64,000 nt of DNA from the IMG/VR virus record IMGVR_UViG_3300027834_000005, positions 1 through 64,000 of that record; one strand, given 5' to 3'. This document shows positions 12,380-63,433 of the stretch, in pieces; position 1 is the first letter of the stretch, and every line of letters begins with the position of its first letter. The position numbers and the translations under genes were made by a program. Below the pieces are notes generated by a model. That model was given only the letters and a program-made list of their open reading frames with translations. It made no database searches and was not told the origin of the DNA.

Positions 12380-12769
12380 ATGGAAGTATTTAAACGTGTA
12401 GCAGATGATGGCGGATTTTATCATGTCAATGAAAAAGGTCAAGCTCATGGTTTATGTGTTACGACCCTTTCAGGTGGTCTCAGAAATGAGGTAAACTACG
12501 AGAATGATTTGAAGCATGGTGAATATAAATTGTTCTATGAAAATGGAAGTATATTCATGCATAGCATGTTTCGTGAAGATGTTGCTTTTGGAGAAATAAA
12601 ATCGTATGACGCTCAAGGTGTGTTAAATAAACATTGTATTATTAATAAAGATGATGTAGTATTGGACATAACTGATGAAACCCCTCTAACCGAAGAACTT
12701 AAGTTTTTACTTAGTATTCAAGGTTATATGTTCCTACCTGAAGATGGAGAACGACATGAACATGAATAG
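12380..12769 (+). CDS. EDxF-tag protein, MORN/YwqK-like repeat type
   Basis: G..G.Y..FYENG repeats; tag LTEELKFLLSIQG. Confidence 0.75.
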   Translation: MEVFKRVADDGGFYHVNEKGQAHGLCVTTLSGGLRNEVNYENDLKHGEYKLFYENGSIFMHSMFREDVAFGEIKSYDAQGVLNKHCIINKDDVVLDITDETPLTEELKFLLSIQGYMFLPEDGERHEHE

Positions 12770-13079
12770 TATTATCGTAGGTGATGAAGCCTTATTAAAG
12801 ACACAGTTGATTAGTCATACGCCTAATAGCGAAGGTTTCTTAGAAGCTAACATAGTTTCTAGAGACGGTAAGACGTTAGATGGCGAGGATAACGTATTGA
12901 AGTTCTTCGAAGAAGACATTTTTTATCGTACAGGCGACTTAGTCATCATGGAAAGTGTTGTTATTGCCGTTAATGGCGATGATGTAGATCTTAAGGTGTT
13001 ATCTACCTTTGGTCGTGATACCGTACGTGAATCAATGACCATAAATCAAGAATTCGTCAATGTAGACGGAAAATACTAG
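12744..13079 (+). CDS. Hypothetical protein
   Basis: ORF; start may be a few codons downstream. Confidence 0.65.
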   Translation: MENDMNMNSIIVGDEALLKTQLISHTPNSEGFLEANIVSRDGKTLDGEDNVLKFFEEDIFYRTGDLVIMESVVIAVNGDDVDLKVLSTFGRDTVRESMTINQEFVNVDGKY

Positions 13080-13086
13080 AAAGTAT

Positions 13087-13115
13087 TTGACAATGGTATT
13101 AATTAGTAGTATCAT
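13087..13115 (+). promoter_or_regulatory. sigma70-type promoter
   Basis: TTGACA-N17-TATCAT. Confidence 0.75.
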
Positions 13116-13157
13116 TGCATCACAAATTAAATAACTCACTCATAAAAGGAAAATCCT

Positions 13158-14372
13158 ATGGCTGCTAAATGTCCGACTCGACAGAAGTTAGTGAAGGCAC
13201 GTATCCAAATGTTAATGAATATGCCGTTCTTCGGTGTACTCGCAACGCATTTACAACTGAAAGAAATTGATGCCAAGTTCTGCCCTACGGCAGGTACTGA
13301 TGGTCGCTCTTTCTATTACAACAAGGACTTCATTGAAAGCCTTGATGATGAAGAGTGTAAATTCTTGTTTGCACATGAAGTTATGCATTGCTGCTATGAC
13401 CATATGGGTCGTCGTGGTCGTCGTGACGCGGACTTGTATAACCAAGCAGCTGATCACGTGATCAACTTGGAAATCACTGACCAGAACGTCGGTAAGCTTA
13501 TTAGCCGTCCAAACGACGATCCTGCTATGATCCCTTGCCATGATACTAAGTATCGCGGTATGTCATCTGATGAGGTCTATGAGATCTTATATGATGAACA
13601 AGAAAAGAACGGCGGCCAAGGCCAAGGTCATAGCTTCGATGTGCATTTCGATGCTGATAGCATGACTGATGAAGAAGCTGAAGAAGCAGGCATTGATAAA
13701 ATGACTGATGATGAGAAGAGCATGGTTCGTGATGCATTCCGTCAAGCGACTTTAGAAGCTGCTAAATCTGCCGGTGCTGAAAACGTGCCAAATGGCGTAC
13801 GTAGCATGATCGATGATCTTTTAGATCCACAAATGGATTGGCGTGAATGTTTGAATGCCAACATCCAAACGTTGGTTAAGAATGACTGGACTTACTCACG
13901 TCCTAACCGTCGTAATTCATCTCTTGGTGGCATCATCTTACCAGGTAATGACTTCGATGAAGCTGTGAGCGTTTGTTGCGCGATTGATACCTCTGGTTCG
14001 ATCTCTCATCAAATGATTCGTGAATTCTTGAGTGAAATCAAGGGTATCATGGAACAGTTCAAGCAGTTCGAAATCAAGATTTGGTGCTTCGACACGGATA
14101 CTTACACTATCTGGAATTACAACGAAGATAACGCCGATGATATGGATGAGTTCTTCCCAGAAGGCGGTGGTGGTACTGAGTTCATGGTGAACTGGGATCG
14201 CATGAAAGAAGAAGATATCGAGCCTGATCAATTCGTGATGTTCACGGATGGTTACCCTTACGGTAGCTGGGGTGAAGAAGAATATCAAGACAACATGGTT
14301 TTCTTGATCAGTGGTAACCCACGTCACGACATCGTTGCGCCGTTCGGCACTACTTTATATTACGACGACTAA
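13158..14372 (+). CDS. HEXXH metallopeptidase-like plus VWA domain protein (DUF2201-like)
   Basis: TAGTDG, FLFAHEVMH, acidic linker, MIDAS IDTSGS, GGGGT, MFTDG. Confidence 0.85.
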   Translation: MAAKCPTRQKLVKARIQMLMNMPFFGVLATHLQLKEIDAKFCPTAGTDGRSFYYNKDFIESLDDEECKFLFAHEVMHCCYDHMGRRGRRDADLYNQAADHVINLEITDQNVGKLISRPNDDPAMIPCHDTKYRGMSSDEVYEILYDEQEKNGGQGQGHSFDVHFDADSMTDEEAEEAGIDKMTDDEKSMVRDAFRQATLEAAKSAGAENVPNGVRSMIDDLLDPQMDWRECLNANIQTLVKNDWTYSRPNRRNSSLGGIILPGNDFDEAVSVCCAIDTSGSISHQMIREFLSEIKGIMEQFKQFEIKIWCFDTDTYTIWNYNEDNADDMDEFFPEGGGGTEFMVNWDRMKEEDIEPDQFVMFTDGYPYGSWGEEEYQDNMVFLISGNPRHDIVAPFGTTLYYDD

Positions 14373-14398
14373 CAGTCGAAAGTAGTAGACAACAACTC

Positions 14399-14432
14399 AA
14401 AAAAGGGATATCATTTAGATATCCCTTTTTTT
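14399..14432 (+). terminator. Intrinsic terminator
   Basis: AAAAAAGGGATATC-ATTTA-GATATCCCTTTTTTT. Confidence 0.9.
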
Positions 14433-14445
14433 ATGGTTATTAAAA

Positions 14446-15525: not shown

Positions 15526-16031
15526 TGACTATCGTCAGCTTGTCGTTATGGGAATCCTATGGTAGATTACCGTGGGATGCCATAACTTTCTGTACTGGTA
15601 ATAAGATTTCCACGTATAGCTTATATGGCGGTGAATTATTTGAGCACTATGAAACCTTCGAAAATGAAAAGTACATCCTTCATGTAAATAAATTGGCGTC
15701 TGGTTACGAGGTGCATCTCAAGGTAATCGGTACTGACACGACAAAATTAATTGTTAATCAGAGATACGATCATAATATGAGAATCGTGGCTAGTAACAAA
15801 ATTTTGGTTGAAGATCTAGCTATCATTAATACTATCAGATGTACATCTGACAAAGAACGAGAAGAGTCTGAAAAAGAACTTTTCGAACTGGCTCTGTCTG
15901 GTGTTACTGTGCCCCCTGAATACATTATAGAGAACGCTTTGGCGGATATCTATTACATGGACTCATGGACCAGATTTAAAGGATGGTTGACGTGTAAGTT
16001 CATAAACCCTATTAATAAGGTAGAACGTTAA
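15525..16031 (+). CDS. Hypothetical protein
   Basis: TAATG overlaps at both ends. Confidence 0.7.
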   Translation: MTIVSLSLWESYGRLPWDAITFCTGNKISTYSLYGGELFEHYETFENEKYILHVNKLASGYEVHLKVIGTDTTKLIVNQRYDHNMRIVASNKILVEDLAIINTIRCTSDKEREESEKELFELALSGVTVPPEYIIENALADIYYMDSWTRFKGWLTCKFINPINKVER

Positions 16032-16327
16032 TGGACGCTAGAATGGTAGCCAACGTAAAGGCTAAGAAAATATTTGAAGAGTTGGAAACTGGGACCAAGC
16101 TCATGGTATCCTGCATACGAGATAATAGACGAGTAGACAAATATGATATTGTGGAAGTGAGTGACGCTTCATACAACGATGATCTTATATGTATTAAACA
16201 GATAGAGGGCGTGTTCGATTATAGACCGTTTGTCGAAGACGAATACAATGAATTAAAAACTATACGTCTTGTGAGTCTGAAGGGTATGTCAGATGAAGAT
16301 ATATTTCTTCTAAGGTTGTCACTGTGA
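16031..16327 (+). CDS. EDxF-tag protein, array A
   Basis: GTKLMVSCI head; tag MSDEDIFLLRLSL. Confidence 0.8.
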   Translation: MDARMVANVKAKKIFEELETGTKLMVSCIRDNRRVDKYDIVEVSDASYNDDLICIKQIEGVFDYRPFVEDEYNELKTIRLVSLKGMSDEDIFLLRLSL

Positions 16328-16617
16328 TCAAAGTGATGAATCCTGAAGATTGTAAACGTTTGATATGCGTCCGTGCTCCTTATGCCATATACAGGGTCAA
16401 TGTTATCTATGACGTGGTAGATACAGGTCCTGCTAACGATGCCGATCATGATATCGAAATACGTATGCTTTCCGAAGACGGACTGACCTATACGTTTCAT
16501 GAAAGTGACATTGATCAGAGTGATGAATTCATGCATGATCGACCTAGTTTCTTCTTTTTCAAGGACATTACTGATATGTCAGATGAAGATGTATTCCATT
16601 TGAGATTATCCATATGA
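16324..16617 (+). CDS. EDxF-tag protein, array A
   Basis: Tag MSDEDVFHLRLSI. Confidence 0.8.
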   Translation: MIKVMNPEDCKRLICVRAPYAIYRVNVIYDVVDTGPANDADHDIEIRMLSEDGLTYTFHESDIDQSDEFMHDRPSFFFFKDITDMSDEDVFHLRLSI

Positions 16618-16901
16618 GTAATCTAGATCGCGTATTGTGCGTCCAAGCTGGATCTTCAGGAAGGTTCACTTTCAAGAAGACATATGATGTGGTAGACGTG
16701 CATGTGACACGCTCACGTCACGAAGTATTATTCCGTAAATTTACAATAATGAGTGATGATGACACCGCATCCGAATTCTATGATGACGAGGACCTTGATC
16801 AGTCACAAGAAGTAATAAGGCATTTTTCTAATTTCGATTATTTCATGAATATATCCGGTATGACTGATGAAGACATATTCCAACATATGCTGAGTAATTA
16901 A
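16614..16901 (+). CDS. EDxF-tag protein, array A
   Basis: VLCV..FTFKKTYDV; tag MTDEDIFQHMLSN. Confidence 0.8.
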   Translation: MSNLDRVLCVQAGSSGRFTFKKTYDVVDVHVTRSRHEVLFRKFTIMSDDDTASEFYDDEDLDQSQEVIRHFSNFDYFMNISGMTDEDIFQHMLSN

Positions 16902-16902
16902 T

Positions 16903-17172
16903 ATGACAGGTTACACGCCTAAAATCAACGACATTTTACGATGCCGATCAACCAATAGAGATGACAACGAAATCACAGTAGGTAAGTCATATAGAGTGAC
17001 TAAAGTTGAATATGGTGAGTTCTATTTTTCTTCCAATAAAGGAAGAACGATGAAGTATAATTCATGTTGCGTTAGTATTGGTTTTGATCTCATATATATG
17101 TTCAAGACTGAATTTGAGACCATAGATCATTTATCTGAAGAAGAGCAGTTTGAGATAAAGCTGAGCGTGTGA
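16903..17172 (+). CDS. EDxF-tag protein, array A
   Basis: DILRC..ITVGKSYRV; tag LSEEEQFEIKLSV. Confidence 0.8.
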   Translation: MTGYTPKINDILRCRSTNRDDNEITVGKSYRVTKVEYGEFYFSSNKGRTMKYNSCCVSIGFDLIYMFKTEFETIDHLSEEEQFEIKLSV

Positions 17173-17173
17173 T

Positions 17174-17458
17174 ATGGAAGTAGGATATAAACTATTATGT
17201 GTGAACTCTGGGAATGGTATATCGGGTGGTGAATTCACCAAGAATAGAGTTTATGATGTTAATATTGTTGACTTAACAAGCACACCCACGTTGTATAGCT
17301 TTAGAATTATTGATGATGATGGTCATTCTGTGAAATTTGATGACATAGACGTAAATCAGAGTGTAGAGGTGATAAGAAAATACCCTAAACTCACGTTCTT
17401 TATGGACGTCACTGACATGTCAGAAGAAGACTTATTTACCTTTATATTGAGTAACTAA
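17174..17458 (+). CDS. EDxF-tag protein, array A
   Basis: GYKLLCV..FTKNRVYDV; tag MSEEDLFTFILSN. Confidence 0.8.
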   Translation: MEVGYKLLCVNSGNGISGGEFTKNRVYDVNIVDLTSTPTLYSFRIIDDDGHSVKFDDIDVNQSVEVIRKYPKLTFFMDVTDMSEEDLFTFILSN

Positions 17459-17459
17459 T

Positions 17460-17759
17460 ATGGACATAACAAATATATCGATTGGCAGTATATTATTATG
17501 TATTAGAACCACTGCGCCTAGGTGGTTCTCTATCGACAAGACGTATGAAGTATCTACGTCACGTCCTACAAGCGGTTATAGTTTTGGATGCTTAGTAATA
17601 TATGATGACCAAGATGATGATTGGGATATAAAAAACTACGTCATCGAATTGGCAGGGTCCCCATCTGAAATAGCCACGTTTGGTGACGAAAAATGTATAT
17701 TCATAGATATTACGAATATGACTGAAGAAGAAATATTCCTTTTTCGTCTATCTTATTGA
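17460..17759 (+). CDS. EDxF-tag protein, array A
   Basis: GSILLCI..FSIDKTYEV; tag MTEEEIFLFRLSY. Confidence 0.8.
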   Translation: MDITNISIGSILLCIRTTAPRWFSIDKTYEVSTSRPTSGYSFGCLVIYDDQDDDWDIKNYVIELAGSPSEIATFGDEKCIFIDITNMTEEEIFLFRLSY

Positions 17760-17784
17760 CACTAAATTGAAAGGGTTGTATTAT
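17756..17784 (+). promoter_or_regulatory. sigma70-type promoter candidate
   Basis: TTGACA-N17-TATTAT; the -10 box overlaps ATG 17783, so it could only serve genes further downstream. Confidence 0.5.
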
Positions 17785-18088
17785 GTTAGAACATATCAAA
17801 GAAGGCGATAAAGTACTGTGCGTACAAGCTGATATTCTTAAGCACATAGACGCTAGATTTGAGGTTGGTAAATTGTATAACGTATGTTGTGTGCGATTTG
17901 CTCCCAGTGGGAAAATCATGGTTAGTTTACAAAGTCCTTGTGGTAATGTGTTGACTTATAAAGAGAAAGATTTCACGTATGAATTACACCACGAAGACCC
18001 TCAATGCTATTATAAGTTTGCCATGCCTGAAAACTTTAATCAGGAAGAATTATTTGAGTTTATGTTGAGAGGAGGAAACGATGAATAA
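17783..18088 (+). CDS. EDxF-tag protein, array A
   Basis: EGDKVLCV..FEVGKLYNV; tag FNQEELFEFMLRGG. Confidence 0.8.
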   Translation: MLEHIKEGDKVLCVQADILKHIDARFEVGKLYNVCCVRFAPSGKIMVSLQSPCGNVLTYKEKDFTYELHHEDPQCYYKFAMPENFNQEELFEFMLRGGNDE

Positions 18089-18359
18089 GGAATTATCCGT
18101 TGGAGACTTTATTATTTGTGACTGGGTAAGAGGTGGTACAACCATATATACCCTCAAGAAGCAGTATCAAATATTGTCTGTTTCAGATGGAGGATTCGAA
18201 CATACCTACATCGTTAGGAATAATGAAGAAACTCTCTTCGAAGTGTACAGCCAAGAAGTGGACGGCGGAAACAATGTGGCTGCGTATACAATGGCTACCT
18301 TCAGATCTGTTAAGAACATGACCAAAGAAGAATTATTTGAATTTATGTTGAGTCACTAG
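18081..18359 (+). CDS. EDxF-tag protein, array A
   Basis: VGDFIIC; tag MTKEELFEFMLSH. Confidence 0.8.
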   Translation: MNKELSVGDFIICDWVRGGTTIYTLKKQYQILSVSDGGFEHTYIVRNNEETLFEVYSQEVDGGNNVAAYTMATFRSVKNMTKEELFEFMLSH

Positions 18360-18361
18360 CC

Positions 18362-18646
18362 ATGAAAGTAAAAGATGCCAGAGAATCCATGTTTGAGTTG
18401 AAAAAAGGATCATTCGTTATGTGTTTGTATGCCGTTTCAAGCAACGTTCTAGAAACTGGCAAGGTATACAAAGTATTGAGAAGTCCTATATGTATTAAGC
18501 CTGCTATGGAAGTATATATTGATGTTGGTGGAATCCCATATTCTTTTTCCGAAAGAGCATTCACTGGTGACCTTGACTCTGTACACGTAATCAATATAGA
18601 CCACATGGATGATGAAGAGATATTCATGTTAAGGCTGTCAGTATGA
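18362..18646 (+). CDS. EDxF-tag protein, array A
   Basis: KGSFVMC..ETGKVYKV; tag MDDEEIFMLRLSV. Confidence 0.8.
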   Translation: MKVKDARESMFELKKGSFVMCLYAVSSNVLETGKVYKVLRSPICIKPAMEVYIDVGGIPYSFSERAFTGDLDSVHVINIDHMDDEEIFMLRLSV

Positions 18647-19350
18647 AAACCAAATTAGCAATAGAAAAAGATAAAGAACGTGAACTGATCGTAGCCAAGT
18701 TCATCTATAAATTGAAAAGAATACATTACTTCGATGAGATACTCGATATCATAGCGGACCCTGAGAATGAATTTCTTTTGTTGTGTCAGCTACACGGGAG
18801 TAACTCTAGTACCTTAACGTTAGAAGAGTTACGTGAGAAGATCAAGACTTACGGTAAGCTTACTGTGACGTGGGATGAAAACTTTGGCTTCACGGAATAT
18901 GAGTCACAGTGGGGTCCACAAAAACATCCTCGTAACCGACATCCTAGATGGTCAAAGGAGTGCGATAAGTATGTGTCTCGTAAGCATTCTCAGTTTAGAG
19001 GTTGCATTAAGATTCTATACGAAAATAAAAATTATGAGTATGGTTTTGGGGACGTTAGTGATTCATTGGAACGCCTTGGCCTTTATACTGGCACAGGTAG
19101 TAGTGGTCCTAGTTGTTCACGATACTATTTCTATACATATGCATTAGACTACACGTTCATCTATGCTAAGCTGCGTAAGTTCCGCCGTGAGTACTTCGCC
19201 GAAGAAGAAAGGTTGAAACTTGTGCACTTCGAAGACACATTGGCAGGAAAACCCTTGACAAAGAACTGTATTAGGTTTATGATGCCACTTTTAAATTCAA
19301 AGAAGATTCTTTTGCCGAATCCTAACCACGACAGGAAATATGTGAGATGA
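18643..19350 (+). CDS. Hypothetical protein, probable paralog of 14446-15117
   Basis: LGLYTGTGSSG motif; similar length and layout. Confidence 0.7.
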   Translation: MKTKLAIEKDKERELIVAKFIYKLKRIHYFDEILDIIADPENEFLLLCQLHGSNSSTLTLEELREKIKTYGKLTVTWDENFGFTEYESQWGPQKHPRNRHPRWSKECDKYVSRKHSQFRGCIKILYENKNYEYGFGDVSDSLERLGLYTGTGSSGPSCSRYYFYTYALDYTFIYAKLRKFRREYFAEEERLKLVHFEDTLAGKPLTKNCIRFMMPLLNSKKILLPNPNHDRKYVR

Positions 19351-19742
19351 GTTTAAAATACACATTATATATTGCAGATAGAGAAAAAAGCATGTATACT
19401 TTTCGTCCTGTTTTGGTTGAAGGGTATCGTAACTCAATCTCTGCCAGCGGCTTCTTAGATAATATGAAGAAGATAGCACATGATATGGCGTACGGTAAGC
19501 ATAAAACGTTGAAAGTGTATGATTACACGTTCACTGATACTCACTTAGACGACATTGACATGCACAATAAAGCTCATTTGAAATGCGGTGGTAAAAAGAA
19601 TCTGTATGAGATTCGTGGCGAGCCTATTGCACTAAAAGATTACTATGAAGAAATTGGTTGGGACTATAAGGCCAAAAAGCTTAATGGTCTAACTATCAGA
19701 CAACACATCAACAAGAAGATGGCGGAGAGAACCGATGATTAG
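19347..19742 (+). CDS. Hypothetical protein
   Basis: ATGA overlap. Confidence 0.7.
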   Translation: MSLKYTLYIADREKSMYTFRPVLVEGYRNSISASGFLDNMKKIAHDMAYGKHKTLKVYDYTFTDTHLDDIDMHNKAHLKCGGKKNLYEIRGEPIALKDYYEEIGWDYKAKKLNGLTIRQHINKKMAERTDD

Positions 19743-54963: not shown

Positions 54964-54968
54964 TCATC

Positions 54969-56413: not shown

Positions 56414-56847
56414 ATTATAATCGCATACTCGTAGAAAATCTCTCATTGGGTGATAAGTTACTCTGTGTAAGAGATGACATAATAGAAAGTAGTACTTCCG
56501 GTGACTCTGCATGGACAGGTAAAGTCGTTACTGTCACCAGAATACATAACGTTAGATGGGGTGCCGGTGCCGGTGATTCAGATGTGGTACGCGATGTGCG
56601 GTTGACTTCAGACATTCTATATGACGATGTTGTCGTGGATGAGTTTCAAATGAACGGCGAGAAAAGATTCTATCGTGTACCTAATCAAGCTTACGGAGAC
56701 AAAATGGTATTCATAAACTATGAAGATATATCTGATATTGATAAATTTGACATAGCTTTATCTGGTAGTGATAGTGATGTGATCGGGCAGGCATATGAAT
56801 CTTGGTTAGAAGGTAACCCATACGCTAAAGACAGGACAAGTGACTAA
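56410..56847 (+). CDS. EDxF-tag protein, array C
   Basis: LGDKLLCV; tag ISDIDKFDIALSG. Confidence 0.8.
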   Translation: MNYNRILVENLSLGDKLLCVRDDIIESSTSGDSAWTGKVVTVTRIHNVRWGAGAGDSDVVRDVRLTSDILYDDVVVDEFQMNGEKRFYRVPNQAYGDKMVFINYEDISDIDKFDIALSGSDSDVIGQAYESWLEGNPYAKDRTSD

Positions 56848-57161
56848 TGATAGACGTAACAACCCCAGAAGATTTCATGGTAGATGGCAATCTATTCCGT
56901 TGTGTATACGCGGACGGCGCAGGCGAATGTTTACGTGACACTACGTTCATTGTTGAACGTCATGGATGTGAAGATTTTGAAGTGGATCTTAGAGGCTACC
57001 ATGATCGCGGAAGTCTAACAATGACTCACGAACAATCACTTGGCGGACAAGGCTATCAATATGCAGATGAGCCATGTAAGATCTATTTCGTAAAAAATGA
57101 TGTTATATTGTCTGAAGAAGACAAGTTTGAACTATCTCTTAAGCATGGGTGGACATGGTGA
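56847..57161 (+). CDS. EDxF-tag protein, array C
   Basis: Tag LSEEDKFELSLKHG. Confidence 0.8.
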   Translation: MIDVTTPEDFMVDGNLFRCVYADGAGECLRDTTFIVERHGCEDFEVDLRGYHDRGSLTMTHEQSLGGQGYQYADEPCKIYFVKNDVILSEEDKFELSLKHGWTW

Positions 57162-57478
57162 AATATTGCGAGAATTTAGATGACTTACGAGGAAGAAGAG
57201 TCGTGTGTACCTTATGCGAAGGTGCCAGAGGTGATGTTGGGTTATTAGGTAATCTTTTCTATGTTACTGCGAGTTGGTCTGGTGGAGAACGGGAACCTTT
57301 CCTCACCTTTAGATGCGTTAACAGCAGTAACATACTCACTATGTCTTTGCCTACCGCTACTGGAAATCTTCTCTATCACTATCACACGGAATCATTGACA
57401 ATGAGGTTCACTAAGCTCTGCGACATGACGGATGAAGATAATTTCGAAATTAAGTTGAAGGGTGGTAGAACATCATGA
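57149..57478 (+). CDS. EDxF-tag protein, array C
   Basis: Tag MTDEDNFEIKLKGG. Confidence 0.8.
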   Translation: MDMVKYCENLDDLRGRRVVCTLCEGARGDVGLLGNLFYVTASWSGGEREPFLTFRCVNSSNILTMSLPTATGNLLYHYHTESLTMRFTKLCDMTDEDNFEIKLKGGRTS

Positions 57479-57897
57479 CTATATCTCGCGTAGACGATAG
57501 AACAATGGTTAAGTTTGTAGACGAAAACGGTTTGCTACAGGGCTACGTATATCACTTCTCTAACGGTCACTGCACAGACAGACTACATTACATTGATAAT
57601 GTATGCGTGGGTTTACAACTTAAATGGTACACAGGCACTGATACCTTGTACATGGCATACATATATGCTAGAGGATGCATGACTGGCGAAGCTATCATGT
57701 TTAATAGAGACGGTTCCATACATTCCCATAATGTTTGGGATGATGATGATAACACCATATGCAATTTAGACGGTTTTCCATCCAAAGAAGATAAATTCGA
57801 ACTCACATTAAAACATGGTAACATAGATTGGTTACCAGAAAACACGCTAGATATTAAGCCGCCAAAAAACAGGACTGATATACATGGACCTCTTTGA
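57475..57897 (+). CDS. EDxF-tag protein, MORN/YwqK-like type
   Basis: GLLQG..MTGE..RDGS; tag PSKEDKFELTLKHG. Confidence 0.8.
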   Translation: MTISRVDDRTMVKFVDENGLLQGYVYHFSNGHCTDRLHYIDNVCVGLQLKWYTGTDTLYMAYIYARGCMTGEAIMFNRDGSIHSHNVWDDDDNTICNLDGFPSKEDKFELTLKHGNIDWLPENTLDIKPPKNRTDIHGPL

Positions 57898-58204
57898 TTC
57901 AAAAAACATACCGGAAGATCGTAGATACGTCATAGTTCAAGACGATTTATGTGACTTCATAGGTGATGTGTGGACTTTACATAAGGTTATTACTAGTGGT
58001 GATCGAGAATATTTCAGTTTCATCAGAGATACCCCAAATAAAGAAAAAACTAGGGAATTCGTAGAAGAGCATTTACGCGGTGAGACTTCTATAGGATTAG
58101 ACACGGACACTAGATTACAATTGGTGGCCGAGTCAAGTATATCCGATGAGGATAAGTTTTACATTGCTTTCAAAGGTTACAGCAAAATAGACGTTGACTC
58201 GTAA
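57884..58204 (+). CDS. EDxF-tag protein, array C
   Basis: Tag ISDEDKFYIAFKG. Confidence 0.8.
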   Translation: MDLFDSKNIPEDRRYVIVQDDLCDFIGDVWTLHKVITSGDREYFSFIRDTPNKEKTREFVEEHLRGETSIGLDTDTRLQLVAESSISDEDKFYIAFKGYSKIDVDS

Positions 58205-58222
58205 CCCCACATAGAGTATAAT
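58194..58222 (+). promoter_or_regulatory. sigma70-type promoter
   Basis: TTGACT-N17-TATAAT. Confidence 0.65.
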
Positions 58223-58225
58223 ACC

Positions 58226-58552
58226 ATGGTAAGAGAAGAATTGCTAGCCTATAAACGTGGCGATATTTTAGTAACTGTGCATGACACAGCTAAACGACGC
58301 TATGGAAGTCTTTACACCATTGAATATTGTTTCGAAGATGTGTTAACTGGTGAGTACATCTATTCATTAAGAAGTGAATCTGGTCACGTACTCAAACTTA
58401 AACATTCGTACATCAATGGCACTAAGGAACTAACAAGTTTTTCAAGTGCCAGAGGCATTCAGTTAGTGATTAAGAACGAACTTACTGAAGAAGAACAGTT
58501 CCTTGGTGAGCTTTGCGGATGGAATAGGGAGGCTATGGGCTTATGCGAGTAA
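58226..58552 (+). CDS. EDxF-tag protein, array C
   Basis: Tag LTEEEQFLGELCG. Confidence 0.8.
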   Translation: MVREELLAYKRGDILVTVHDTAKRRYGSLYTIEYCFEDVLTGEYIYSLRSESGHVLKLKHSYINGTKELTSFSSARGIQLVIKNELTEEEQFLGELCGWNREAMGLCE

Positions 58553-58884
58553 TGAATAAAGATGACCTTATCGTAGATAATAAATTCGTAGTTACCTTTC
58601 ACAAAAGAGGTAAGGCAGACGGCGAAGTGTGGATTTATAAACGTGCGCATTCACCTTGTAAAACTGACGAAGAAATCAAATATGTATTTAAACGATTCAC
58701 AGCCAATGGCGTCATCTTAGAAACTCATCGAATGACATTCAGAAGCTTTACTGGTGGCGATGAAATAGCTGTCAGAGATTTAGAGATAAGTCCCATAGAC
58801 ACCATTACCGATGAAGACATTTTCTTCATGAAGATGCAAGGTGTGAATACAAGCAGAGTGGAGCAATTCCGTGGAAAAGAATGA
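58543..58884 (+). CDS. EDxF-tag protein, array C
   Basis: Tag ITDEDIFFMKMQG. Confidence 0.8.
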   Translation: MRVMNKDDLIVDNKFVVTFHKRGKADGEVWIYKRAHSPCKTDEEIKYVFKRFTANGVILETHRMTFRSFTGGDEIAVRDLEISPIDTITDEDIFFMKMQGVNTSRVEQFRGKE

Positions 58885-59299
58885 TTTTAATTTAGACTAC
58901 GGGAACCTTTGTACTGTAGAAGGATTGCTTAAGGGTCATCAATATTTGATAATTAAAGATAGGAAAGACCTACATTCATCTATAGGTGAGTGTAGCGAGG
59001 GTCGTATTGTCGAATATAGTAGTGTTATAGACAGCCACGCAGGAGAGTATGAGTTTTCTATTGTAGGTGGTAATGATCATACCTACTCTACTGTACCGGA
59101 GATGAACGGACGTAAGCCGTGGTATATTGGAAGTGCCCGAAACTCTAGAAACTACGTGGTATATGTCCCTTTGCACTTAATACCTAAAGACGTATTGTTC
59201 CACTGTGCGTTATCCGGTGACTACACTGAACTATGTGAACAACTTTATTACGAATGGAGTATGTGGTGGGAAAAAGAAATAAAGCCAAAACGCGATTAA
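58871..59299 (+). CDS. EDxF-tag protein (divergent), array C
   Basis: Tag IPKDVLFHCALSG. Confidence 0.7.
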   Translation: MEKNDFNLDYGNLCTVEGLLKGHQYLIIKDRKDLHSSIGECSEGRIVEYSSVIDSHAGEYEFSIVGGNDHTYSTVPEMNGRKPWYIGSARNSRNYVVYVPLHLIPKDVLFHCALSGDYTELCEQLYYEWSMWWEKEIKPKRD

Positions 59300-59712
59300 C
59301 CAAGCATCGAAGAGGCGGATTAGAATGGACAGAAGATGACCTTGGTCGTAAACAAGGTGAGCTACTAAGATTCCATAACAGCATAACCATACTTAGAGAG
59401 CACTACGTAGATAACTTATTACATGGTATGACTACTAGGTGTGATTACTTTGGTAATCGAACGGCAACGACCACTTATGTCAATGGTGAGTTACATGGGA
59501 GAAAAACCATGTACATGAGAGACGGAAGAGTTAAGGCTGTGCGTCATTTTTATTTCGGTAAGCTACACGGTGAACTTGTAACATACATCGGCACGAATAT
59601 GGAACACGCTGTATATGATAATGGATTTAAAATACACGGTCTTCACATGCCTTTATCTGAAGAAGATAAGTTTGAATTGGCACTTAAGTATGAAGGATTA
59701 CAATGGGCATAA
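59254..59712 (+). CDS. EDxF-tag protein, MORN/YwqK-like type (start uncertain)
   Basis: Repeated LHG motifs; tag LSEEDKFELALKYEG. Confidence 0.8.
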   Translation: MEYVVGKRNKAKTRLTKHRRGGLEWTEDDLGRKQGELLRFHNSITILREHYVDNLLHGMTTRCDYFGNRTATTTYVNGELHGRKTMYMRDGRVKAVRHFYFGKLHGELVTYIGTNMEHAVYDNGFKIHGLHMPLSEEDKFELALKYEGLQWA

Positions 59713-59999
59713 GACCAGAGCTACTACAATATAGAGACGGAGATGAGCTACTTTGTGTGCGTAGTAATGACAAAGATTTTGATGTCAGTGACACCTACGT
59801 GGTGTCGGGAGGATACCTCAATGATTCACTCGATAGAGTATTTACTATCGTCACGGACTACACTACGTGGCGAATAGTAGAAAACTACTTGAACGGCACT
59901 AATATCATGAAGGATGATACTAGTGTGTTGATGGTGAGAAAGGATTTACTCACTGAAGAAGATAAATTTCATGGAGAACTTTCAGGATGGAAAGTATAA
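59703..59999 (+). CDS. EDxF-tag protein, array C
   Basis: DGDELLCV; tag LTEEDKFHGELSG. Confidence 0.8.
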   Translation: MGIRPELLQYRDGDELLCVRSNDKDFDVSDTYVVSGGYLNDSLDRVFTIVTDYTTWRIVENYLNGTNIMKDDTSVLMVRKDLLTEEDKFHGELSGWKV

Positions 60000-60418
60000 A
60001 TTTCGAAGAACTAAGATCACATAACCTATCAGAATCTAAAGTTGGTGATAAATTCCTATGTGTGTTCCACAAGGGTAAATGGTACAGTCACGACCAATTA
60101 GAAAGTAACGTAGTAACTTTCAAAGAGGTGAAGCTTTACGAGTACATGAAGAAAGGCAAAAAAGTAAGTGTGGTTGAGAGAATGACGTTAGAAATTAATG
60201 GCAGAGACCATCATATGTATAGCGACACTCAGTTAGTAGTGACTGCCGGTGATAAGAGAAGAGGCGACTATGCACGTAACGATTACGTCACAGCGTTCAT
60301 TCCACTGGAACAGCTTACCCAAGAAGCACTATTTGAATCAACTCTATGCGGTGACTATAAAGAGATGTCTAAGCAGTTGAGATCGGAGTTTATAAAATGG
60401 AAAAAGACAGCAAATTAG
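59987..60418 (+). CDS. EDxF-tag protein, array C
   Basis: VGDKFLCV; tag LTQEALFESTLCG. Confidence 0.75.
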   Translation: MESINFEELRSHNLSESKVGDKFLCVFHKGKWYSHDQLESNVVTFKEVKLYEYMKKGKKVSVVERMTLEINGRDHHMYSDTQLVVTAGDKRRGDYARNDYVTAFIPLEQLTQEALFESTLCGDYKEMSKQLRSEFIKWKKTAN

Positions 60419-60798
60419 ATTACTATAAGAATCTTCCTTACGGGCGTTTAGTGACTGATGATGATTTATACATCGGAAACAAATTCCTAGTGTACCGAGA
60501 CAATGAACATGACACATGCCGTAGAGGACACGTTATCATACTTGATGGACTGATAGACTTCGACGGAGACTACACGTTCGAAATGTGTGAAACTCCTGAC
60601 GACATGTCCGTGATGTTCATAAGTAAGGATGAGGCAAACGGCAACGGTGACACGTACGGAGAAAATGTTCTGCTTGTTCCAATGGACCTAATACTTGAAG
60701 AAGATAAGTTCATTGGTGTATTATCCGGTGACTGGGAATATATATGTGACGTGATGGACAAGGCAAAAGAAAACCATAAGAAGAAATTAAAAGGGTAG
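60397..60798 (+). CDS. EDxF-tag protein, array C
   Basis: Tag ILEEDKFIGVLSG. Confidence 0.8.
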   Translation: MEKDSKLDYYKNLPYGRLVTDDDLYIGNKFLVYRDNEHDTCRRGHVIILDGLIDFDGDYTFEMCETPDDMSVMFISKDEANGNGDTYGENVLLVPMDLILEEDKFIGVLSGDWEYICDVMDKAKENHKKKLKG

Positions 60799-60801
60799 TA
60801 G

Positions 60802-61131
60802 ATGAATATTTTCAAGGATGTTGAAGACATACGCAATTTAAGAAAAACTAGGTTCTCCACCCTTGAGTCGGGCGATGAAGTGTTATGTGTGAATGGACTA
60901 GACATAGGTAGCATCCTCACGATTGAGAAGCACACCCACAATACATTCATCAGAATGCCTAATAACAAATTGATTGCCGTCAACTACGCTACCCTATGCA
61001 CTGATTACTTCGCTCATATACCAACAAAGTACTTATGCGGCGAAGAAACGTTCTACGCTACCTTATCAAACGACTGGTCAGGCTCTGCTAATAGAATATT
61101 TAATGAATATATGAAGGTGGTTTTAACATGA
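60802..61131 (+). CDS. EDxF-tag protein, array C
   Basis: SGDEVLCV; tag LCGEETFYATLSN. Confidence 0.75.
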   Translation: MNIFKDVEDIRNLRKTRFSTLESGDEVLCVNGLDIGSILTIEKHTHNTFIRMPNNKLIAVNYATLCTDYFAHIPTKYLCGEETFYATLSNDWSGSANRIFNEYMKVVLT

Positions 61132-61436
61132 TAGTGTACCCTACTAAAGATAACATAGAACTAAAAACGCGACTAGTTTGTGTAAAAGATTCAGGTAATG
61201 AATACATGAATAACAGAGCTTCCATATCTAGTATGCCAGATTTCGTATACGAAGAAGCGTATGGTATCATATTCGATGATGCTTGGGCCGAAGGTAAGGT
61301 TAGCTTAGAGTGTATGAGTGGAAAAGCTCTTCCTAATGGGAGAGAGATGCTTTTCGCCCTAGAAGAATTCTTAGACGACGAAGATCTATTTTACCTGTCA
61401 CTTGAAAATGGCGTGTCTTTGGGTAAACCCATATAG
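61128..61436 (+). CDS. EDxF-tag protein, array C
   Basis: Tag LDDEDLFYLSLEN. Confidence 0.8.
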   Translation: MIVYPTKDNIELKTRLVCVKDSGNEYMNNRASISSMPDFVYEEAYGIIFDDAWAEGKVSLECMSGKALPNGREMLFALEEFLDDEDLFYLSLENGVSLGKPI

Positions 61437-61440
61437 CCCA

Positions 61441-61469
61441 TTGACAATATCACTAAGAACGAGTATAGT
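61441..61469 (+). promoter_or_regulatory. sigma70-type promoter
   Basis: TTGACA-N17-TATAGT. Confidence 0.7.
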
Positions 61470-61492
61470 GTTCTCTTTTGGAGTCATAACAT

Positions 61493-61831
61493 ATGTACGT
61501 ACTTGAGAAAGACCTATACAAAGGCAATCGATTTTTGTGCATCCAAGACACTATGTATGATTTTAAAAATCTAATTATAGAGGTGAACGAAATCCATATT
61601 GAGTACGGTACAAGATCAATACTACTTGACCACCCTAAGTACCCAATGCCTATAGCCATTACATACGAAGGTATGAAAAGTAGACATTATTACAATACTT
61701 TAGTACTCGTGCCAATAGACAAGTTAGTACTACCAGAAAAAATGGAGTTCGAAGCTTTACTAACTAACGATTGGGAAGAAGTGACTTCCTACGTTATCTC
61801 CAACGTTCACACTTGCATAAAGGACTTTTAA
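61493..61831 (+). CDS. EDxF-tag protein (divergent), array C
   Basis: KGNRFLCI; tag LPEKMEFEALLTN. Confidence 0.7.
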   Translation: MYVLEKDLYKGNRFLCIQDTMYDFKNLIIEVNEIHIEYGTRSILLDHPKYPMPIAITYEGMKSRHYYNTLVLVPIDKLVLPEKMEFEALLTNDWEEVTSYVISNVHTCIKDF

Positions 61832-61834
61832 CAT

Positions 61835-62290
61835 ATGCTTACTCTCGTTGAAGAAGCCCTTTGTGAAATGTACATAGACGAAGACGGTAGACGTCAAGGT
61901 GCGACTACGCATTTCTATGACTTCGGTGAAAAAAAAGCCATACACAAGATCATGGAATTTAAAGACGACGTTGTTAATGGCGCGTACATGTTGTTCAGGA
62001 TTGATGGCTCCATTAAATTCAACCATAGCTACGTTAATGGGTTCAAATGCGGGGAACAAACAACATGGAGAAGTAACGGCGTAATCTTCAGAAGTGAAAT
62101 GTGCTCTTCAATCTCTGTGTTGCATGGCGAAGCAGTTGAAAGAGATAGAAACGGGTACGTAAATAGCCACTGCATATATGCTAATGGCGTGGTAGTTGAA
62201 CGCCTTGACGATAGCGAACTCACCGACGAAGATAAGTTTGAGCTTAGGCTTAAGTACGGAGACATTGGTTTCCTAAAGCACTTCAAGTAG
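61835..62290 (+). CDS. EDxF-tag protein, MORN/YwqK-like type
   Basis: GRRQG..VNG..LHGE; tag LTDEDKFELRLKYG. Confidence 0.8.
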   Translation: MLTLVEEALCEMYIDEDGRRQGATTHFYDFGEKKAIHKIMEFKDDVVNGAYMLFRIDGSIKFNHSYVNGFKCGEQTTWRSNGVIFRSEMCSSISVLHGEAVERDRNGYVNSHCIYANGVVVERLDDSELTDEDKFELRLKYGDIGFLKHFK

Positions 62291-62298
62291 GAACGTAT

Positions 62299-62619
62299 AT
62301 GAGACAAGTTGATCGTGATGACATAGTTACAGGTACGAAGTTCTTATTGGTAGCTAAGCACACTAATGATATTGTCATTGGCGAGGTAATTTCAAAGTCT
62401 AGAAGTAATTTTTACTACAAGATTGGAAACGGTAGAGTTTACGTGTTGGGTTTCACCACTACGGAGGTTTTGCCTGTGCCCGATTTGAGGGTCATACCAT
62501 TAGACTATATGGATTGGTATGTGGAACAGGGCGAAATCAGAGACCAAGACGTTTTCCTCGCTAAGTTAAGTGGTGACTGGAACGACGTAGTAGATAAGAT
62601 AACAGGAAGAAATCTATGA
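62299..62619 (+). CDS. EDxF-tag protein, array C
   Basis: Tag IRDQDVFLAKLSG. Confidence 0.75.
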   Translation: MRQVDRDDIVTGTKFLLVAKHTNDIVIGEVISKSRSNFYYKIGNGRVYVLGFTTTEVLPVPDLRVIPLDYMDWYVEQGEIRDQDVFLAKLSGDWNDVVDKITGRNL

Positions 62620-63002
62620 CCATGCGTATTGTTACTTCTAGGGACCTAATCAATGAAGGAATGGAGCTTCTCCTTTTTTCATTCACTGATAAGGAGAAGC
62701 ACTCACACGGCATATTCGTAGAGAAGTCTGTATCTATGTGGACTGAAGGCCCAGAGTATATAATAGATATCACCAGAAAAGACGGTAACACTACAAAGTT
62801 TGGTGCTAAGAAACATGTATTAATGGGTGTCGTACCTTACTCAGAAAAAGATGGCATCAAGAAGTTCTTGGTTGCTATACCAGTTTCAAGTTTAGATGAG
62901 AACGACCTGTTTCTGTTAAAACTAAGTAATAATGCTGATCATATAAGAGCTAAGACAAAAAAGCTTATCAACTCATATTCAATTGAACACTGGGTAGACT
63001 AA
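62616..63002 (+). CDS. EDxF-tag protein, array C
   Basis: Tag LDENDLFLLKLSN. Confidence 0.8.
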   Translation: MTMRIVTSRDLINEGMELLLFSFTDKEKHSHGIFVEKSVSMWTEGPEYIIDITRKDGNTTKFGAKKHVLMGVVPYSEKDGIKKFLVAIPVSSLDENDLFLLKLSNNADHIRAKTKKLINSYSIEHWVD

Positions 63003-63433
63003 TGTCGGAATTAAAACGCATAGTAGAAAGAAGTGGCGGAATCATAGAAACGTTCCAAGTTGATGAAACTGGCTCGAAACAGGGAGTCAGTGTTAGGACG
63101 TTCGAGAACGGAAAGCCATGGCTTATATCTTATTACCAAAATGGGTTCTTACATGGCGAATTCATAGAGCTGCACGAAGATGGGTACATACGTGAGCACT
63201 CTATGTACTCTAATGGTAAACAGTGCGGCGAGATGGTATTAAAAAGAGATGACAGGGTAGTACGCCATGAAATATGGTATAGTGCAGAATTGGTCCATAC
63301 ATTCATGTATCTTGGATCTATTTTCTGTGAACCAACAGAAGAAACCAAGTTTGAAATGACACTTAAATACGGCACCAAGTGGTTACCCAAGAGGACATAT
63401 GAAGAGTTATCAGCTGAATTTGAACAGTCCTAA
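63002..63433 (+). CDS. EDxF-tag protein, MORN/YwqK-like type
   Basis: GSKQG..LHGE..CGE; tag PTEETKFEMTLKYG. Confidence 0.8.
   Translation: MSELKRIVERSGGIIETFQVDETGSKQGVSVRTFENGKPWLISYYQNGFLHGEFIELHEDGYIREHSMYSNGKQCGEMVLKRDDRVVRHEIWYSAELVHTFMYLGSIFCEPTEETKFEMTLKYGTKWLPKRTYEELSAEFEQS

What the first reader, a model, noticed from the sequence alone, without database searches (positions are those of the whole stretch)
12380..63433. The same tag is grafted onto unrelated head folds (MORN/YwqK-like versus SH3-like beta heads)
Eight members (12380, 51282, 53715, 54380, 57475, 59254, 61835, 63002) have G-x-x-x-G / LHGE beta-hairpin repeats typical of MORN-variant/YwqK-like proteins. Most others have a 'GDxLxC...[FY]TxGKxYxV' head, suggestive of an SH3-like barrel (inference). 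Seven of the MORN-type genes are interspersed among beta-head genes in array C, and most end in their own tag variant (KFELxLK[YH]G). One tail on two unrelated folds argues that it is an independent, transferable module rather than part of a fold. YwqK-like domains are known as antitoxin-type binders.
Basis: partly seen in the sequence, partly recalled or inferred. Interest (0 to 1): 0.8.

Follow-up and report, generated by a model that had tools for sequence, protein, structure and literature searches.

The report
One tail helix, two protein folds
A huge marine phage encodes about 90 small early-type proteins that all end in the same 12-15-residue helix, although their bodies have at least two unrelated folds (SH3-like barrel and MORN-repeat sheet), so the helix is a separate shared module whose job is still unknown.

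Summary
In the window, 76 + strand genes carry a C-terminal motif: hydrophobic-[ST]-[DE]-E-[DE]-x-F-x-hydrophobic-x-L-x-G. All profile hits above 6 bits lie in + strand frames.

- **MORN class:** the eight listed genes form one sequence cluster. The predicted fold is a MORN-type hairpin sheet (pLDDT 93.8) that matches MORN1 and SET7/9.
- **SH3 class:** the other class models as a five-stranded SH3-like barrel (pLDDT 91.1).
- **Heads versus tails:** head profiles are unrelated (hhalign probability 0.1-0.2%). Tail profiles align in register (96.8%, E 2e-10).
- **Head without tail:** the SH3-like head also occurs as tag-less tandem repeats in other proteins.

Three caveats apply.
- Tails track head class and array, which fits one fusion followed by whole-gene duplication rather than repeated grafting.
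- Both models show the tail as a confident, ordered helix, so it is not a floppy tag.
- YwqK membership is not established, and at least six heads fit neither class.

Function is inferred: early, diversifying binder proteins that share a docking or capping helix. The family is absent from Pfam, PHROGs, NCBIfam and cultured phages, and is known only from a few uncultured marine jumbo phages.

The parts
12380..12769 (+). Lone MORN-type tagged gene (129 aa), outside the arrays; tag at 12686-12724 (LTEELKFLLSIQG).
   Evidence: Pfam MORN_2 E 1.4e-5, below the cut-off. Clusters with the other 7 MORN genes. Tail 6.7 bits, matched by 1 of 1000 shuffles.
16031..20705 (+). Array A: 11 tagged genes with SH3-like heads. 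In this tag variant the protein mostly ends at ...F-x-x-x-L-S-x-stop (for example 16286-16324, MSDEDIFLLRLSL).
   Evidence: Heads are homologous to array B and C heads (hhalign 93% and 73%).
25850..26648 (+). Pair of tagged genes (127 and 133 aa) with unclassified beta-rich heads. Their tail resembles the MORN subtype (26517-26555, PTDEDIFELTLKY).
   Evidence: The Atlas model has low confidence and no fold could be assigned.
30064..38233 (+). Array B: 24 tagged SH3-like-head genes with tag variant F-x-[FY]-x-[IL]-G-G-x-[ED]-x-L. It is interrupted by untagged genes at 32211-32621, 36460-36918 (Macro domain) and 37469-37654.
   Evidence: Alignment A2. Nine of the 16 most conserved columns lie in the tag, and F is invariant in 24 of 24. 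The model of 35021-35335 has pLDDT 91.1, with 5 strands plus helix 82-91, which is the tag at 35258-35296.
29733..29761 (+). Perfect sigma-70 consensus promoter-like site in the gap before array B, just after a terminator-like hairpin at 29695-29718.
   Evidence: This is a consensus match only; the total number of sites is not above the shuffle expectation.
49624..51239 (+). Tagged genes 49624-50157 and 50745-51239 with longer heads (unclassified and doubtful, respectively), plus 50154-50741 with a degenerate tag. Their tails are close to the MORN subtype.
51231..51259 (+). Sigma-70-like promoter site (11 of 12 matches, with TG) directly upstream of the first MORN gene of array C.
   Evidence: Similar sites lie in gaps at 56038, 58194 and 61441.
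51282..63722 (+). Array C within the window: 33 tagged genes, 26 non-MORN and 7 MORN. The non-MORN tag variant is F-x-x-x-L-S-G-[DN]-[WYF].
   Evidence: The array continues at least 10 kb beyond the window.
51282..51581 (+). MORN-type gene (99 aa); tag at 51513-51551.
53715..54056 (+). MORN-type gene (113 aa); tag at 53982-54020. This is the weakest tail (4.2 bits, matched by 3 of 1000 shuffles).
54380..54673 (+). MORN-type gene (97 aa); tag at 54611-54649 (18.9 bits).
57475..57897 (+). MORN-type gene (140 aa); tag at 57778-57816.
59254..59712 (+). MORN-type gene (152 aa, the most repeats); tag at 59653-59691.
61835..62290 (+). MORN-type gene (151 aa), the modelled representative; tag at 62219-62257, which is helix 131-141.
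   Evidence: AlphaFold pLDDT 93.8, pTM 0.80, 11 strands plus one helix. Foldseek matches MORN1, SET7/9 and axonemal MORN proteins.
63002..63433 (+). MORN-type gene (143 aa); tag at 63332-63370.
56847..57161 (+). Non-MORN-head gene that carries the MORN-subtype tail (57108-57146, LSEEDKFELSLKH). It is the best candidate for a tail exchange or for the donor lineage.
   Evidence: Its tail DNA is only 73% identical to that of 59254, so any exchange was not recent. The head assignment is weak (6.3 bits leave-one-out).

Best explanation
**What is shown.** The window belongs to a huge uncultured marine phage. It carries a lineage-specific, massively expanded family of small proteins of 85-170 aa, built as a variable beta-rich head plus a constant C-terminal module.

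- The module is a short connecting stretch ending in a conserved hydrophobic residue, followed by an alpha-helix.
- The helix has an S/T N-cap, an acidic triplet, a near-invariant Phe, a Leu four residues later and a Gly stop.
- It is homologous across proteins whose heads have unrelated folds (SH3-like barrel and MORN-repeat hairpin sheet).
- It is the most conserved part of the proteins and is conserved at the protein level, not the DNA level.

**What is inferred about its history.** The module was joined to a MORN-repeat head once, or very few times, because the MORN genes have their own tail subtype. Whole genes were then amplified by tandem duplication, and copy number differs sharply between related phages.

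**What is inferred about function.**
- The genes are early genes read from sigma-70-like promoters.
- The hypervariable heads act as binders of diverse host or defence targets.
- The constant helix packs one hydrophobic face (F, L) on the head's beta-sheet and offers its acidic N-terminus and second hydrophobic stripe as a common surface. That surface would dock to one shared partner or serve for self-assembly.

This is the logic of 'many binders, one handle'.
For: **Tag is real and coding.**
- 75 hits above 6 bits, all in + strand frames; 76 curated genes.
- Codons at conserved positions are diverse: F is TTC 47 and TTT 29, and the conserved L uses five codons.
- The highest tail DNA identity between any two genes is 80% over 45 nt.

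**Tail homologous, heads not.**
- Tails: hhalign 96.8%, E 2.2e-10.
- Heads: 0.1-0.2%.
- Shuffle tests support the tail match.

**Folds.**. The MORN profile matches the SET7/9 MORN region at E 8e-6.

**Tail is the most conserved part.**

**Heads are autonomous elsewhere.**

**One fusion followed by gene duplication.**
- MORN tail subtype: 0 of 10,000 permutations.
- Head-tail Mantel r = 0.19-0.20, 0 of 2000 permutations.

**Dynamic copy number.** The relative L002/L003 has a single tagged gene where this phage has array B. L006 has its own array with the tail variant LSG[RK]LP.

**Early expression.** Sites with 11-12 of 12 matches to the sigma-70 consensus lie on the + strand in gaps before arrays.

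**Ordered helix in both contexts.** pLDDT is about 95.
Against: - No experiment or expression data exist. Only one marine DNA run holds the sequence.
- No partner has been identified.
- I could not inspect model coordinates or PAE, so packing of the helix on the head is inferred from pLDDT and pTM only.
- High pLDDT in a monomer model fits a purely intramolecular cap as well as it fits a handle.
- The total number of promoter-like sites does not exceed the shuffle expectation.
- The binder role of the heads rests on what SH3-like and MORN domains generally do, which is established knowledge but was not tested here.
- Tails differ between arrays after the Gly, which would require either several partners or a partner that reads only the core.
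Confidence: 0.5

Rival explanations
1. The tail is only an intramolecular structural element. A strand-helix cap covers the exposed hydrophobic face or edge of any small beta domain and stabilises it. It is shared because of common descent, and no partner is involved.
For: - The helix has pLDDT of about 95 and pTM is 0.80-0.83 in monomer models of both classes.
- The helix follows the last strand without a linker.
- S/T-x-x-[DE] is a classical helix N-capping box and Gly a classical C-cap (established knowledge).
- Tails co-inherit with heads.
Against: - The SH3-like head exists as a complete domain without the helix in tandem-repeat proteins.
- The helix is more conserved than the head cores and keeps the same residues on two unrelated folds, whereas a cap would be expected to co-vary with the surface it covers.
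- Glu at the second acidic position is present in 63 of 76 genes, which is more than capping requires.
- Hydrophobic residues lie on two opposite helix faces (F and L versus the residue two after F). This last point is my inference from the sequences.
Confidence: 0.3
2. The tail is an address label for virion packaging and ejection. It would be analogous to the C-terminal cargo-loading peptides of encapsulins or to the capsid-targeting sequences of T4 internal proteins, so that the phage injects a cocktail of binders.
For: - The position is terminal and the motif is short and shared by many otherwise unrelated cargo-like proteins.
- The phage has a huge genome and hence a huge capsid.
- The G-rich continuation in array B (I-G-G-x-E-x-L) loosely recalls encapsulin L-x-I-G-S-L motifs. 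That comparison is from memory and is a lead only.
Against: - The genes sit among replication and repair genes behind sigma-70-like early promoters, not in the structural module.
- The tail is an ordered helix abutting the domain, not a peptide on a flexible linker.
- There are no virion proteomics.
Confidence: 0.08
3. The tail is a docking site or degron for the phage's own soluble FtsH-like AAA+ protease (22975-24966). The tagged proteins would either be adaptors that deliver bound targets for destruction, or be cleared themselves at the end of the early phase.
For: - An AAA+/Peptidase_M41 protein is encoded between arrays A and B.
- The relative L003, which also has tagged genes, has one too.
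- The protease has no match in cultured phages, and two tagged small proteins used as queries also found none.
- Array A proteins end in non-polar C-termini, a feature of known FtsH and ClpXP substrates (established knowledge).
Against: - Co-occurrence rests on two related genomes and is not independent.
- The tail is predicted to be folded, whereas degrons are usually unstructured.
- In arrays B and C the tail is followed by variable extensions, so it is not at the very C-terminus.
Confidence: 0.07
4. The tail similarity is convergence, a compositional artefact, or a DNA-level element such as a recombination site or regulatory cassette, rather than a homologous protein module.
For: - The motif is short, with about 12 informative positions.
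- Acidic-plus-aromatic helices are common.
- T4-type phages are known to shuffle genes through conserved regulatory cassettes (established knowledge).
Against: - The in-register profile-profile match has E 2.2e-10.
- All eight MORN tails beat at least 997 of 1000 shuffles at the same C-terminal position.
- No hits fall in non-coding frames or on the minus strand.
- Synonymous codons vary freely and tail DNA identity is at most 80%.
- The tag starts 10-50 codons before the stop, which is too far to act as the next gene's ribosome-binding site.
Confidence: 0.03

Closest known systems
MORN-repeat proteins (MORN1, SET7/9 N-terminal domain, axonemal MORN proteins; Pfam MORN and MORN_2)
   Same: - The eight (plus six further) MORN-type heads are stacks of 2-5 beta-hairpin repeats with the G-x-x-G / hG-E pattern.
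- The model matches MORN structures by Foldseek at probability 1.0.
- The profile matches the SET7/9 MORN region at E 8e-6.
   Different: - Single-sequence Pfam scores are all below the gathering cut-offs.
- The proteins are very small and end in the family tag helix. I did not test whether known MORN proteins carry that helix; the Foldseek and PDB sequence hits were not inspected for one.
YwqK-family immunity proteins of polymorphic (LXG) toxin systems
   Same: Both are small MORN-variant repeat proteins. YwqK binds and neutralises its cognate deaminase toxin YwqJ (bioRxiv 10.64898/2026.09.29.755374). Tandem arrays of divergent paralogs are typical of immunity genes (established knowledge).
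   Different: - No toxin gene was seen next to any MORN gene; the neighbours in array C are other tagged genes.
- MORN_2 is below threshold.
- The genes are phage-encoded, and the tail is not part of the MORN_2 repeat model.
Small SH3-like / KOW-like beta-barrel domains of phage proteins (YorP, DUF6501, DUF7244, RecD and Pif1 helicase SH3 domains)
   Same: - Five-strand barrel model.
- Weak Foldseek and Atlas matches to eS4 KOW, PetP, YorP, SH3_13 and Pif1_2B.
- Tandem-repeat relatives hit DUF6501 at 41 bits.
   Different: - No window protein reaches any Pfam, PHROG or NCBIfam model.
- PDB matches have E of 0.04 or worse and TM 0.33-0.46.
- The extra C-terminal helix is specific to this family.
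Viral multigene families with a variable binding domain plus a constant C-terminal module (for example poxvirus ankyrin-repeat proteins with a C-terminal PRANC/F-box-like motif); bacterial adaptor SspB with its C-terminal ClpX-binding peptide
   Same: The architecture is the same: many paralogs, a hypervariable binder and one short conserved C-terminal element. In the known cases that element docks all members to one shared machine (established knowledge).
   Different: This is an analogy only, with no sequence or structural relation tested or expected. Here the shared partner is unknown, and the element is a packed helix rather than an F-box or a peptide on a linker.
Terminal targeting peptides for HK97-fold shells (encapsulin cargo-loading peptides; T4 capsid-targeting sequence)
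   Same: Both are short terminal motifs shared by otherwise unrelated proteins.
   Different: - The T4 signal is N-terminal and is cleaved.
- Encapsulin peptides sit on flexible linkers.
- Here the motif is a structured helix, the genes are in an early-type region, and there are no virion data.

Membership tests
MORN-repeat superfamily | Pfam MORN (PF02493) or MORN_2 (PF07661) match above the gathering score | tested here: not met
   The best hit is 12380 against MORN_2 at 25.2 bits, against a cut-off of 29.6. The others score 12.9-15.6 bits, and three of the eight have no hit.
MORN-repeat superfamily | Profile-level sequence similarity to proteins with solved MORN repeats | tested here: met
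   The profile of 13 MORN-type proteins (A4) matches the N-terminal MORN region of SET7/9 (1h3i, 1mt6) at E 8.2e-6 and 1.3e-5.
MORN-repeat superfamily | Fold: a single-layer antiparallel sheet built of stacked beta-hairpin repeats | tested here: met
   The AlphaFold model of 61835 has pLDDT 93.8 and 11 strands in hairpins. Foldseek matches MORN1 of T. brucei, T. gondii and P. falciparum, SET7/9 and axonemal MORN proteins at probability 1.0 and TM 0.4-0.6.
YwqK-family antitoxin / immunity protein | Family-level sequence match (MORN_2-based YwqK models) | tested here: inconclusive
   MORN_2 hits are sub-threshold only. NCBIfam gave only weak hits to a Leptospira MORN adhesin model (about 19 bits against a cut-off of 250). 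No direct comparison with B. subtilis YwqK was run.
YwqK-family antitoxin / immunity protein | Encoded next to a cognate toxin gene (LXG, deaminase or similar) | tested here: not met
   The neighbours of the seven array C MORN genes are other tagged small genes. 12380 lies between a zinc-finger protein and a DUF2201 metallopeptidase. No toxin domain was seen in the proteins that were scanned, and not every neighbour was scanned.
YwqK-family antitoxin / immunity protein | Binds and neutralises a toxin | not testable with these tools
   This needs co-expression or binding assays.
SH3-like small beta-barrel | Five-stranded barrel fold | tested here: met
   The model of 35021 has pLDDT 91.1 and pTM 0.83, with five strands. 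The best structural neighbours are SH3/KOW-type barrels (eS4, PetP, YorP, RecD SH3_13), but the matches are weak: E 0.04 or worse and TM 0.33-0.5.
SH3-like small beta-barrel | All non-MORN tagged heads share this domain | tested here: inconclusive
   Array A, B and C head profiles are mutually homologous (hhalign 73-93%). The heads of 7224, 15525, 20629, 25850, 26247 and 49624 match neither class, and 50745 is doubtful. A leave-one-out profile cannot separate weak members from MORN controls.
Curated phage or protein families (Pfam-A, PHROGs v4, NCBIfam) | Any model that covers the head-plus-tag proteins or the tag | tested here: not met
   There were no significant hits for 10 representatives in Pfam. 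PHROGs gave only one weak hit (phrog_6261, E 2.9e-4, unknown function). NCBIfam gave none.
Terminal capsid / encapsulin targeting peptide | Short terminal motif on a flexible linker, with the proteins found inside the shell | tested here: inconclusive
   The terminal position is met. The flexible linker is not met, because the helix is ordered and directly follows the last strand. Virion content is not testable here.

The most novel reading that the evidence does not exclude
The tail is a common address label. Through one short helix, this huge phage would route about a hundred different binder proteins, on at least two unrelated scaffolds, to a single machine. That machine could be its own soluble FtsH-like AAA+ protease (targeted destruction of host or defence proteins, a phage analogue of poxvirus ANK-PRANC or of SspB-type adaptors) or the capsid interior (a cocktail of injected binders). 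Either would be a previously undescribed, programmable targeting system in phages.
Probability: 0.15. Interest if true: 0.9.

Novelty: new variant of a known kind. Interest (0 to 1): 0.62.

Why it matters
About half of the genes in this 64-kb stretch of a roughly 350-410-kb phage belong to one family that no curated database describes. The family shows an unusually clean case of modular protein evolution: one 12-15-residue helix is kept under stronger constraint than the domains it is attached to, across two unrelated folds.

If the helix is a shared docking handle, the family would be a natural library of small binders wired to a common effector. That bears on how huge phages take over or disarm hosts, and it offers a minimal portable module for protein engineering.

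If the helix is only a cap, it is still a compact, transferable stabiliser of beta domains.

In either case it explains a large block of 'hypothetical proteins' in huge-phage genomes and gives a profile for finding more of them.

Tried and rejected
- **DNA-level explanations** (recombination site, regulatory cassette, ribosome-binding site of the next gene). Rejected because codons at conserved positions vary freely, tail DNA identity is at most 80% over 45 nt, and the tag lies 10-50 codons before the stop.
- **Recent gene conversion of tails between MORN and neighbouring genes.** Not seen.
- **Cultured phage relatives.** The collection of 50,697 records gave no DNA match. There was also no tblastn match for two tagged proteins or for the FtsH-like protease. 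Only the NAD-dependent ligase finds distant jumbo phages at about 38% identity.
- **The search for related loci with family alignments.** Failed because no stretch was conserved enough.
- **Degenerate DNA pattern for one tag variant in IMG/VR.** Returned 60 hits to one unrelated prophage protein and a single true hit, which is the same phage. It therefore gives no information about how widespread the tag is.
- **Classifying the odd heads.** The ESM Atlas models of 26247 and 49624 were of low confidence and gave nothing. A leave-one-out head profile was too weak to classify array C outliers.
- **Literature.** Searches for a described family of this kind found nothing relevant.
- **Formal head and tail trees.** Not attempted, because tails of about 17 residues cannot resolve a tree. 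I used label permutation and a Mantel test instead.
- **Read laying.** Not used, because the only run that holds the sequence is the DNA source sample, kept as contigs.

Full report
**Context**

The window is almost entirely + strand coding, about 39% G+C, with steadily rising GC skew. It encodes:
- a DNA polymerase B fragment, a 5'-3' exonuclease and a sigma-like protein;
- a MoxR-like AAA protein with a DUF2201 metallopeptidase;
- a soluble FtsH-like AAA+/M41 protease, a thioredoxin, RtcB and an NAD-dependent DNA ligase.

The ligase is about 38% identical to those of jumbo phages of Stenotrophomonas, Xanthomonas, Sinorhizobium and Agrobacterium. Nothing matches cultured phages at the DNA level.

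The same sequence occurs on contigs of 347-410 kb:
- NCBI GCA_902730825.1;
- an ENA assembly;
- IMG/VR UViG_3300027834_000005;
- a Logan contig from a marine metagenome.

It is therefore an uncultured marine huge phage.

**The tag is real**

Translating the + strand gene chain shows that most small genes end in the motif hydrophobic-[ST]-[DE]-E-[DE]-x-F-x-hydrophobic-x-L-x-G.
- A profile built from 61 non-MORN tails finds 75 hits above 6 bits among the 413 six-frame ORF pieces of at least 50 aa. All 75 are in + strand reading frames and none is on the minus strand.
- After curation 76 genes carry the tag: 11 in array A (16031-20705), 24 in array B (30064-38233), 34 in array C (50745-63722) and 7 scattered.
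- Conservation is at the protein level. The near-invariant Phe uses TTC 47 times and TTT 29 times, as in the heads. The conserved Leu uses five codons and the S/T cap many.
- No two tails share more than 80% DNA identity over 45 nt.
- In the SH3-type alignments, 9 of the 16 most informative columns fall within the 13 residues of the tag, and Phe is the most conserved residue (24 of 24, and 60 of 65).

**Two head classes**
- Heads with the tails removed are extremely divergent.
- In profile-profile comparison, the heads of arrays A, B and C are homologous to each other (probability 73-93%, E 1e-5 to 1e-7). The MORN-type heads match none of them (probability 0.1-0.2%).

*SH3-type model.* With an alignment of 65 relatives, AlphaFold models 35021-35335 at pLDDT 91.1 and pTM 0.83. 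It shows a five-stranded barrel followed by helix 82-91, which is the tag, and a short second helix. Its structural neighbours are SH3/KOW-type barrels, all weakly matched:
- ribosomal eS4, PetP and the SPbeta protein YorP;
- RecD and Pif1 SH3 domains;
- small uncharacterised phage proteins.

*MORN-type model.* AlphaFold models 61835-62290 at pLDDT 93.8 and pTM 0.80. It shows 11 strands in hairpins plus helix 131-141, again the tag.
- Foldseek matches MORN1 proteins, the SET7/9 N-terminal domain, axonemal MORN proteins and the hairpin domains of TarM and GtfB.
- The family profile hits the SET7/9 MORN region by sequence at E 8e-6.
- Single-sequence Pfam MORN and MORN_2 hits are all sub-threshold.

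The MORN fold is therefore supported, but YwqK membership is not.

- The MORN tails score with the non-MORN tail profile at the right place. Each beats at least 997 of 1000 shuffles.
- In the reverse test, a MORN-tail profile places 41 of 61 non-MORN proteins above the 99th percentile of shuffles.
- Tail profiles align in register at 96.8% probability, E 2.2e-10.

The heads are not one fold, so neither refutation condition holds.

**Is the tail an independent module?**

*Evidence for.*
- A full HMMER search of 1.84 billion representative proteins with the array B profile found only 89 hits.
- Twenty-three of these are window proteins. About 38 are other small head-plus-tag proteins, with their own tail variants such as LSG[RK]LP.
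- About 25 are longer proteins in which the SH3-like head is repeated 3-4 times in tandem with no tag.
- The barrel is therefore complete without the helix. One MORN relative from another sample also lacks the tag.

*Limits.*
- Tails fall into subtypes that follow array and head class.
- The MORN subtype (F-E-L-x-L-K-[YH]-G-x-x-[WF]-L) is sharply distinct from its neighbours in array C (0 of 10,000 permutations).
- Head and tail similarities are positively correlated (Mantel r = 0.19-0.20, 0 of 2000 permutations).
- The simplest history is one fusion of the module to a MORN head, or very few, followed by duplication of whole genes.
- Non-MORN genes with MORN-like tails (56847, 26247, 25850, 49624, 50745) may mark the donor lineage or an old exchange. 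No recent exchange is visible.
- At least six tagged heads fit neither class, so there may be further scaffolds.

**Dynamics**
- L001, L069 and L070 are 100% identical to the window where they overlap. They show that array C continues at least 10 kb further, with six more MORN-type genes.
- A more distant relative (L002/L003) keeps the order FtsH-like, thioredoxin, RtcB, ligase. It has a single tagged gene where this phage has the 24-gene array B.
- Another relative (L006) has its own array of at least 12 genes with a different tail ending.
- The family therefore expands and contracts quickly.

**How it most likely works (inferred)**
- The strongest sigma-70-like sites (11-12 of 12 matches) are almost all on the + strand. 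Many of them sit in the few intergenic gaps before arrays: 17756, 29733, 51231, 56038, 58194 and 61441. This fits host-polymerase early transcription, although the total site count is no higher than in shuffles.
- Small, hypervariable SH3-like and MORN domains are typical protein or ligand binders (established knowledge). YwqK, a MORN-variant protein, is a toxin-binding immunity protein.
- I therefore read the family as a diversified set of early binders aimed at host or defence targets.
- The helix has a classical S/T N-cap and a Gly C-cap, so part of its pattern is structural.
- It also keeps the same acidic triplet, with Glu at the second acidic position in 63 of 76 genes. It has hydrophobic residues on two opposite faces, on two unrelated folds, and it is more conserved than the head cores.
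- I favour a helix that packs on the head with one face and offers a common surface with the other. That surface would serve a shared partner or self-assembly.
- A purely structural cap is the main rival. Packaging-signal and protease-adaptor or degron readings are less likely but not excluded.
- I could not examine coordinates or PAE, and there are no expression or interaction data.

**Novelty**
- No Pfam, PHROG or NCBIfam model covers these proteins.
- No cultured phage has them.
- Literature searches found no description.
- The general kind is known from large eukaryotic viruses and bacterial adaptors: viral multigene families with a variable binder and a constant terminal element.
- This is a new variant of that kind, in a phage, with a new motif, on two folds, at very high copy number.

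Noticed in passing
window 36460-36918 (+): A Macro-domain protein (Pfam Macro, E 1.3e-6) sits inside array B among the tagged genes. Macro domains bind or remove ADP-ribose, so this could be a counter-defence gene.
   Followed up: partly
window 22975-24966 (+): A soluble FtsH-like protein (AAA, ClpB_D2-small and Peptidase_M41 domains). It has no tblastn match in 50,697 cultured phage records but is present in the related contig L003.
   Followed up: partly
window 28415-29704 (+); L002 2492-4654: RtcB is 429 aa here but 720 aa in the related phage, where it is followed by a 318-aa gene with faint homing-endonuclease hits (NUMOD3, Phage_endo_I). This suggests an insertion or intein in the relative.
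   Followed up: no
window 29792-38562 versus L002 5764-7837: The relative has a single tagged gene between RtcB and the DNA ligase, where this phage has the 24-gene array B. This is a large lineage-specific expansion.
   Followed up: partly
beyond the window end: L070 10324-20324: Array C continues at least 10 kb past the window. It holds further tagged genes, six more MORN-type genes, and another tail ending (L-S/D-G-E/S/T-L-P) that resembles the one in the other phage, L006.
   Followed up: partly
whole window: The same phage appears as contigs of 347,087 bp (GCA_902730825.1), 347,153 bp, 347,232 bp and 410,284 bp in different assemblies. The longer one may include a terminal repeat or a concatemer junction.
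   Followed up: no
window 9900-11183 and 13158-14372 (+): A MoxR-like AAA ATPase and a DUF2201 metallopeptidase/VWA protein, a pair that usually works together, flank the lone MORN-type gene 12380.
   Followed up: no
window 27967-27995 and 29733-29761 (+); 14399-14431: Two perfect TTGACA-17-TATAAT promoter-like sites, and a 14-bp-stem bidirectional terminator-like hairpin after the DUF2201 gene.
   Followed up: no
window 24954-25853 and 46138-46799 (+): Two clusters of small, very hydrophobic (probably membrane) proteins. 46138 ends in a tag-like 'LFIEKLGGEV' that I treated as a chance match.
   Followed up: no
window 47230-47499 (+): A small protein with an N-terminal (PET)n repeat. A homologue lies in the other phage, L006 (6633-6878), next to a conserved 236-aa protein.
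   Followed up: no
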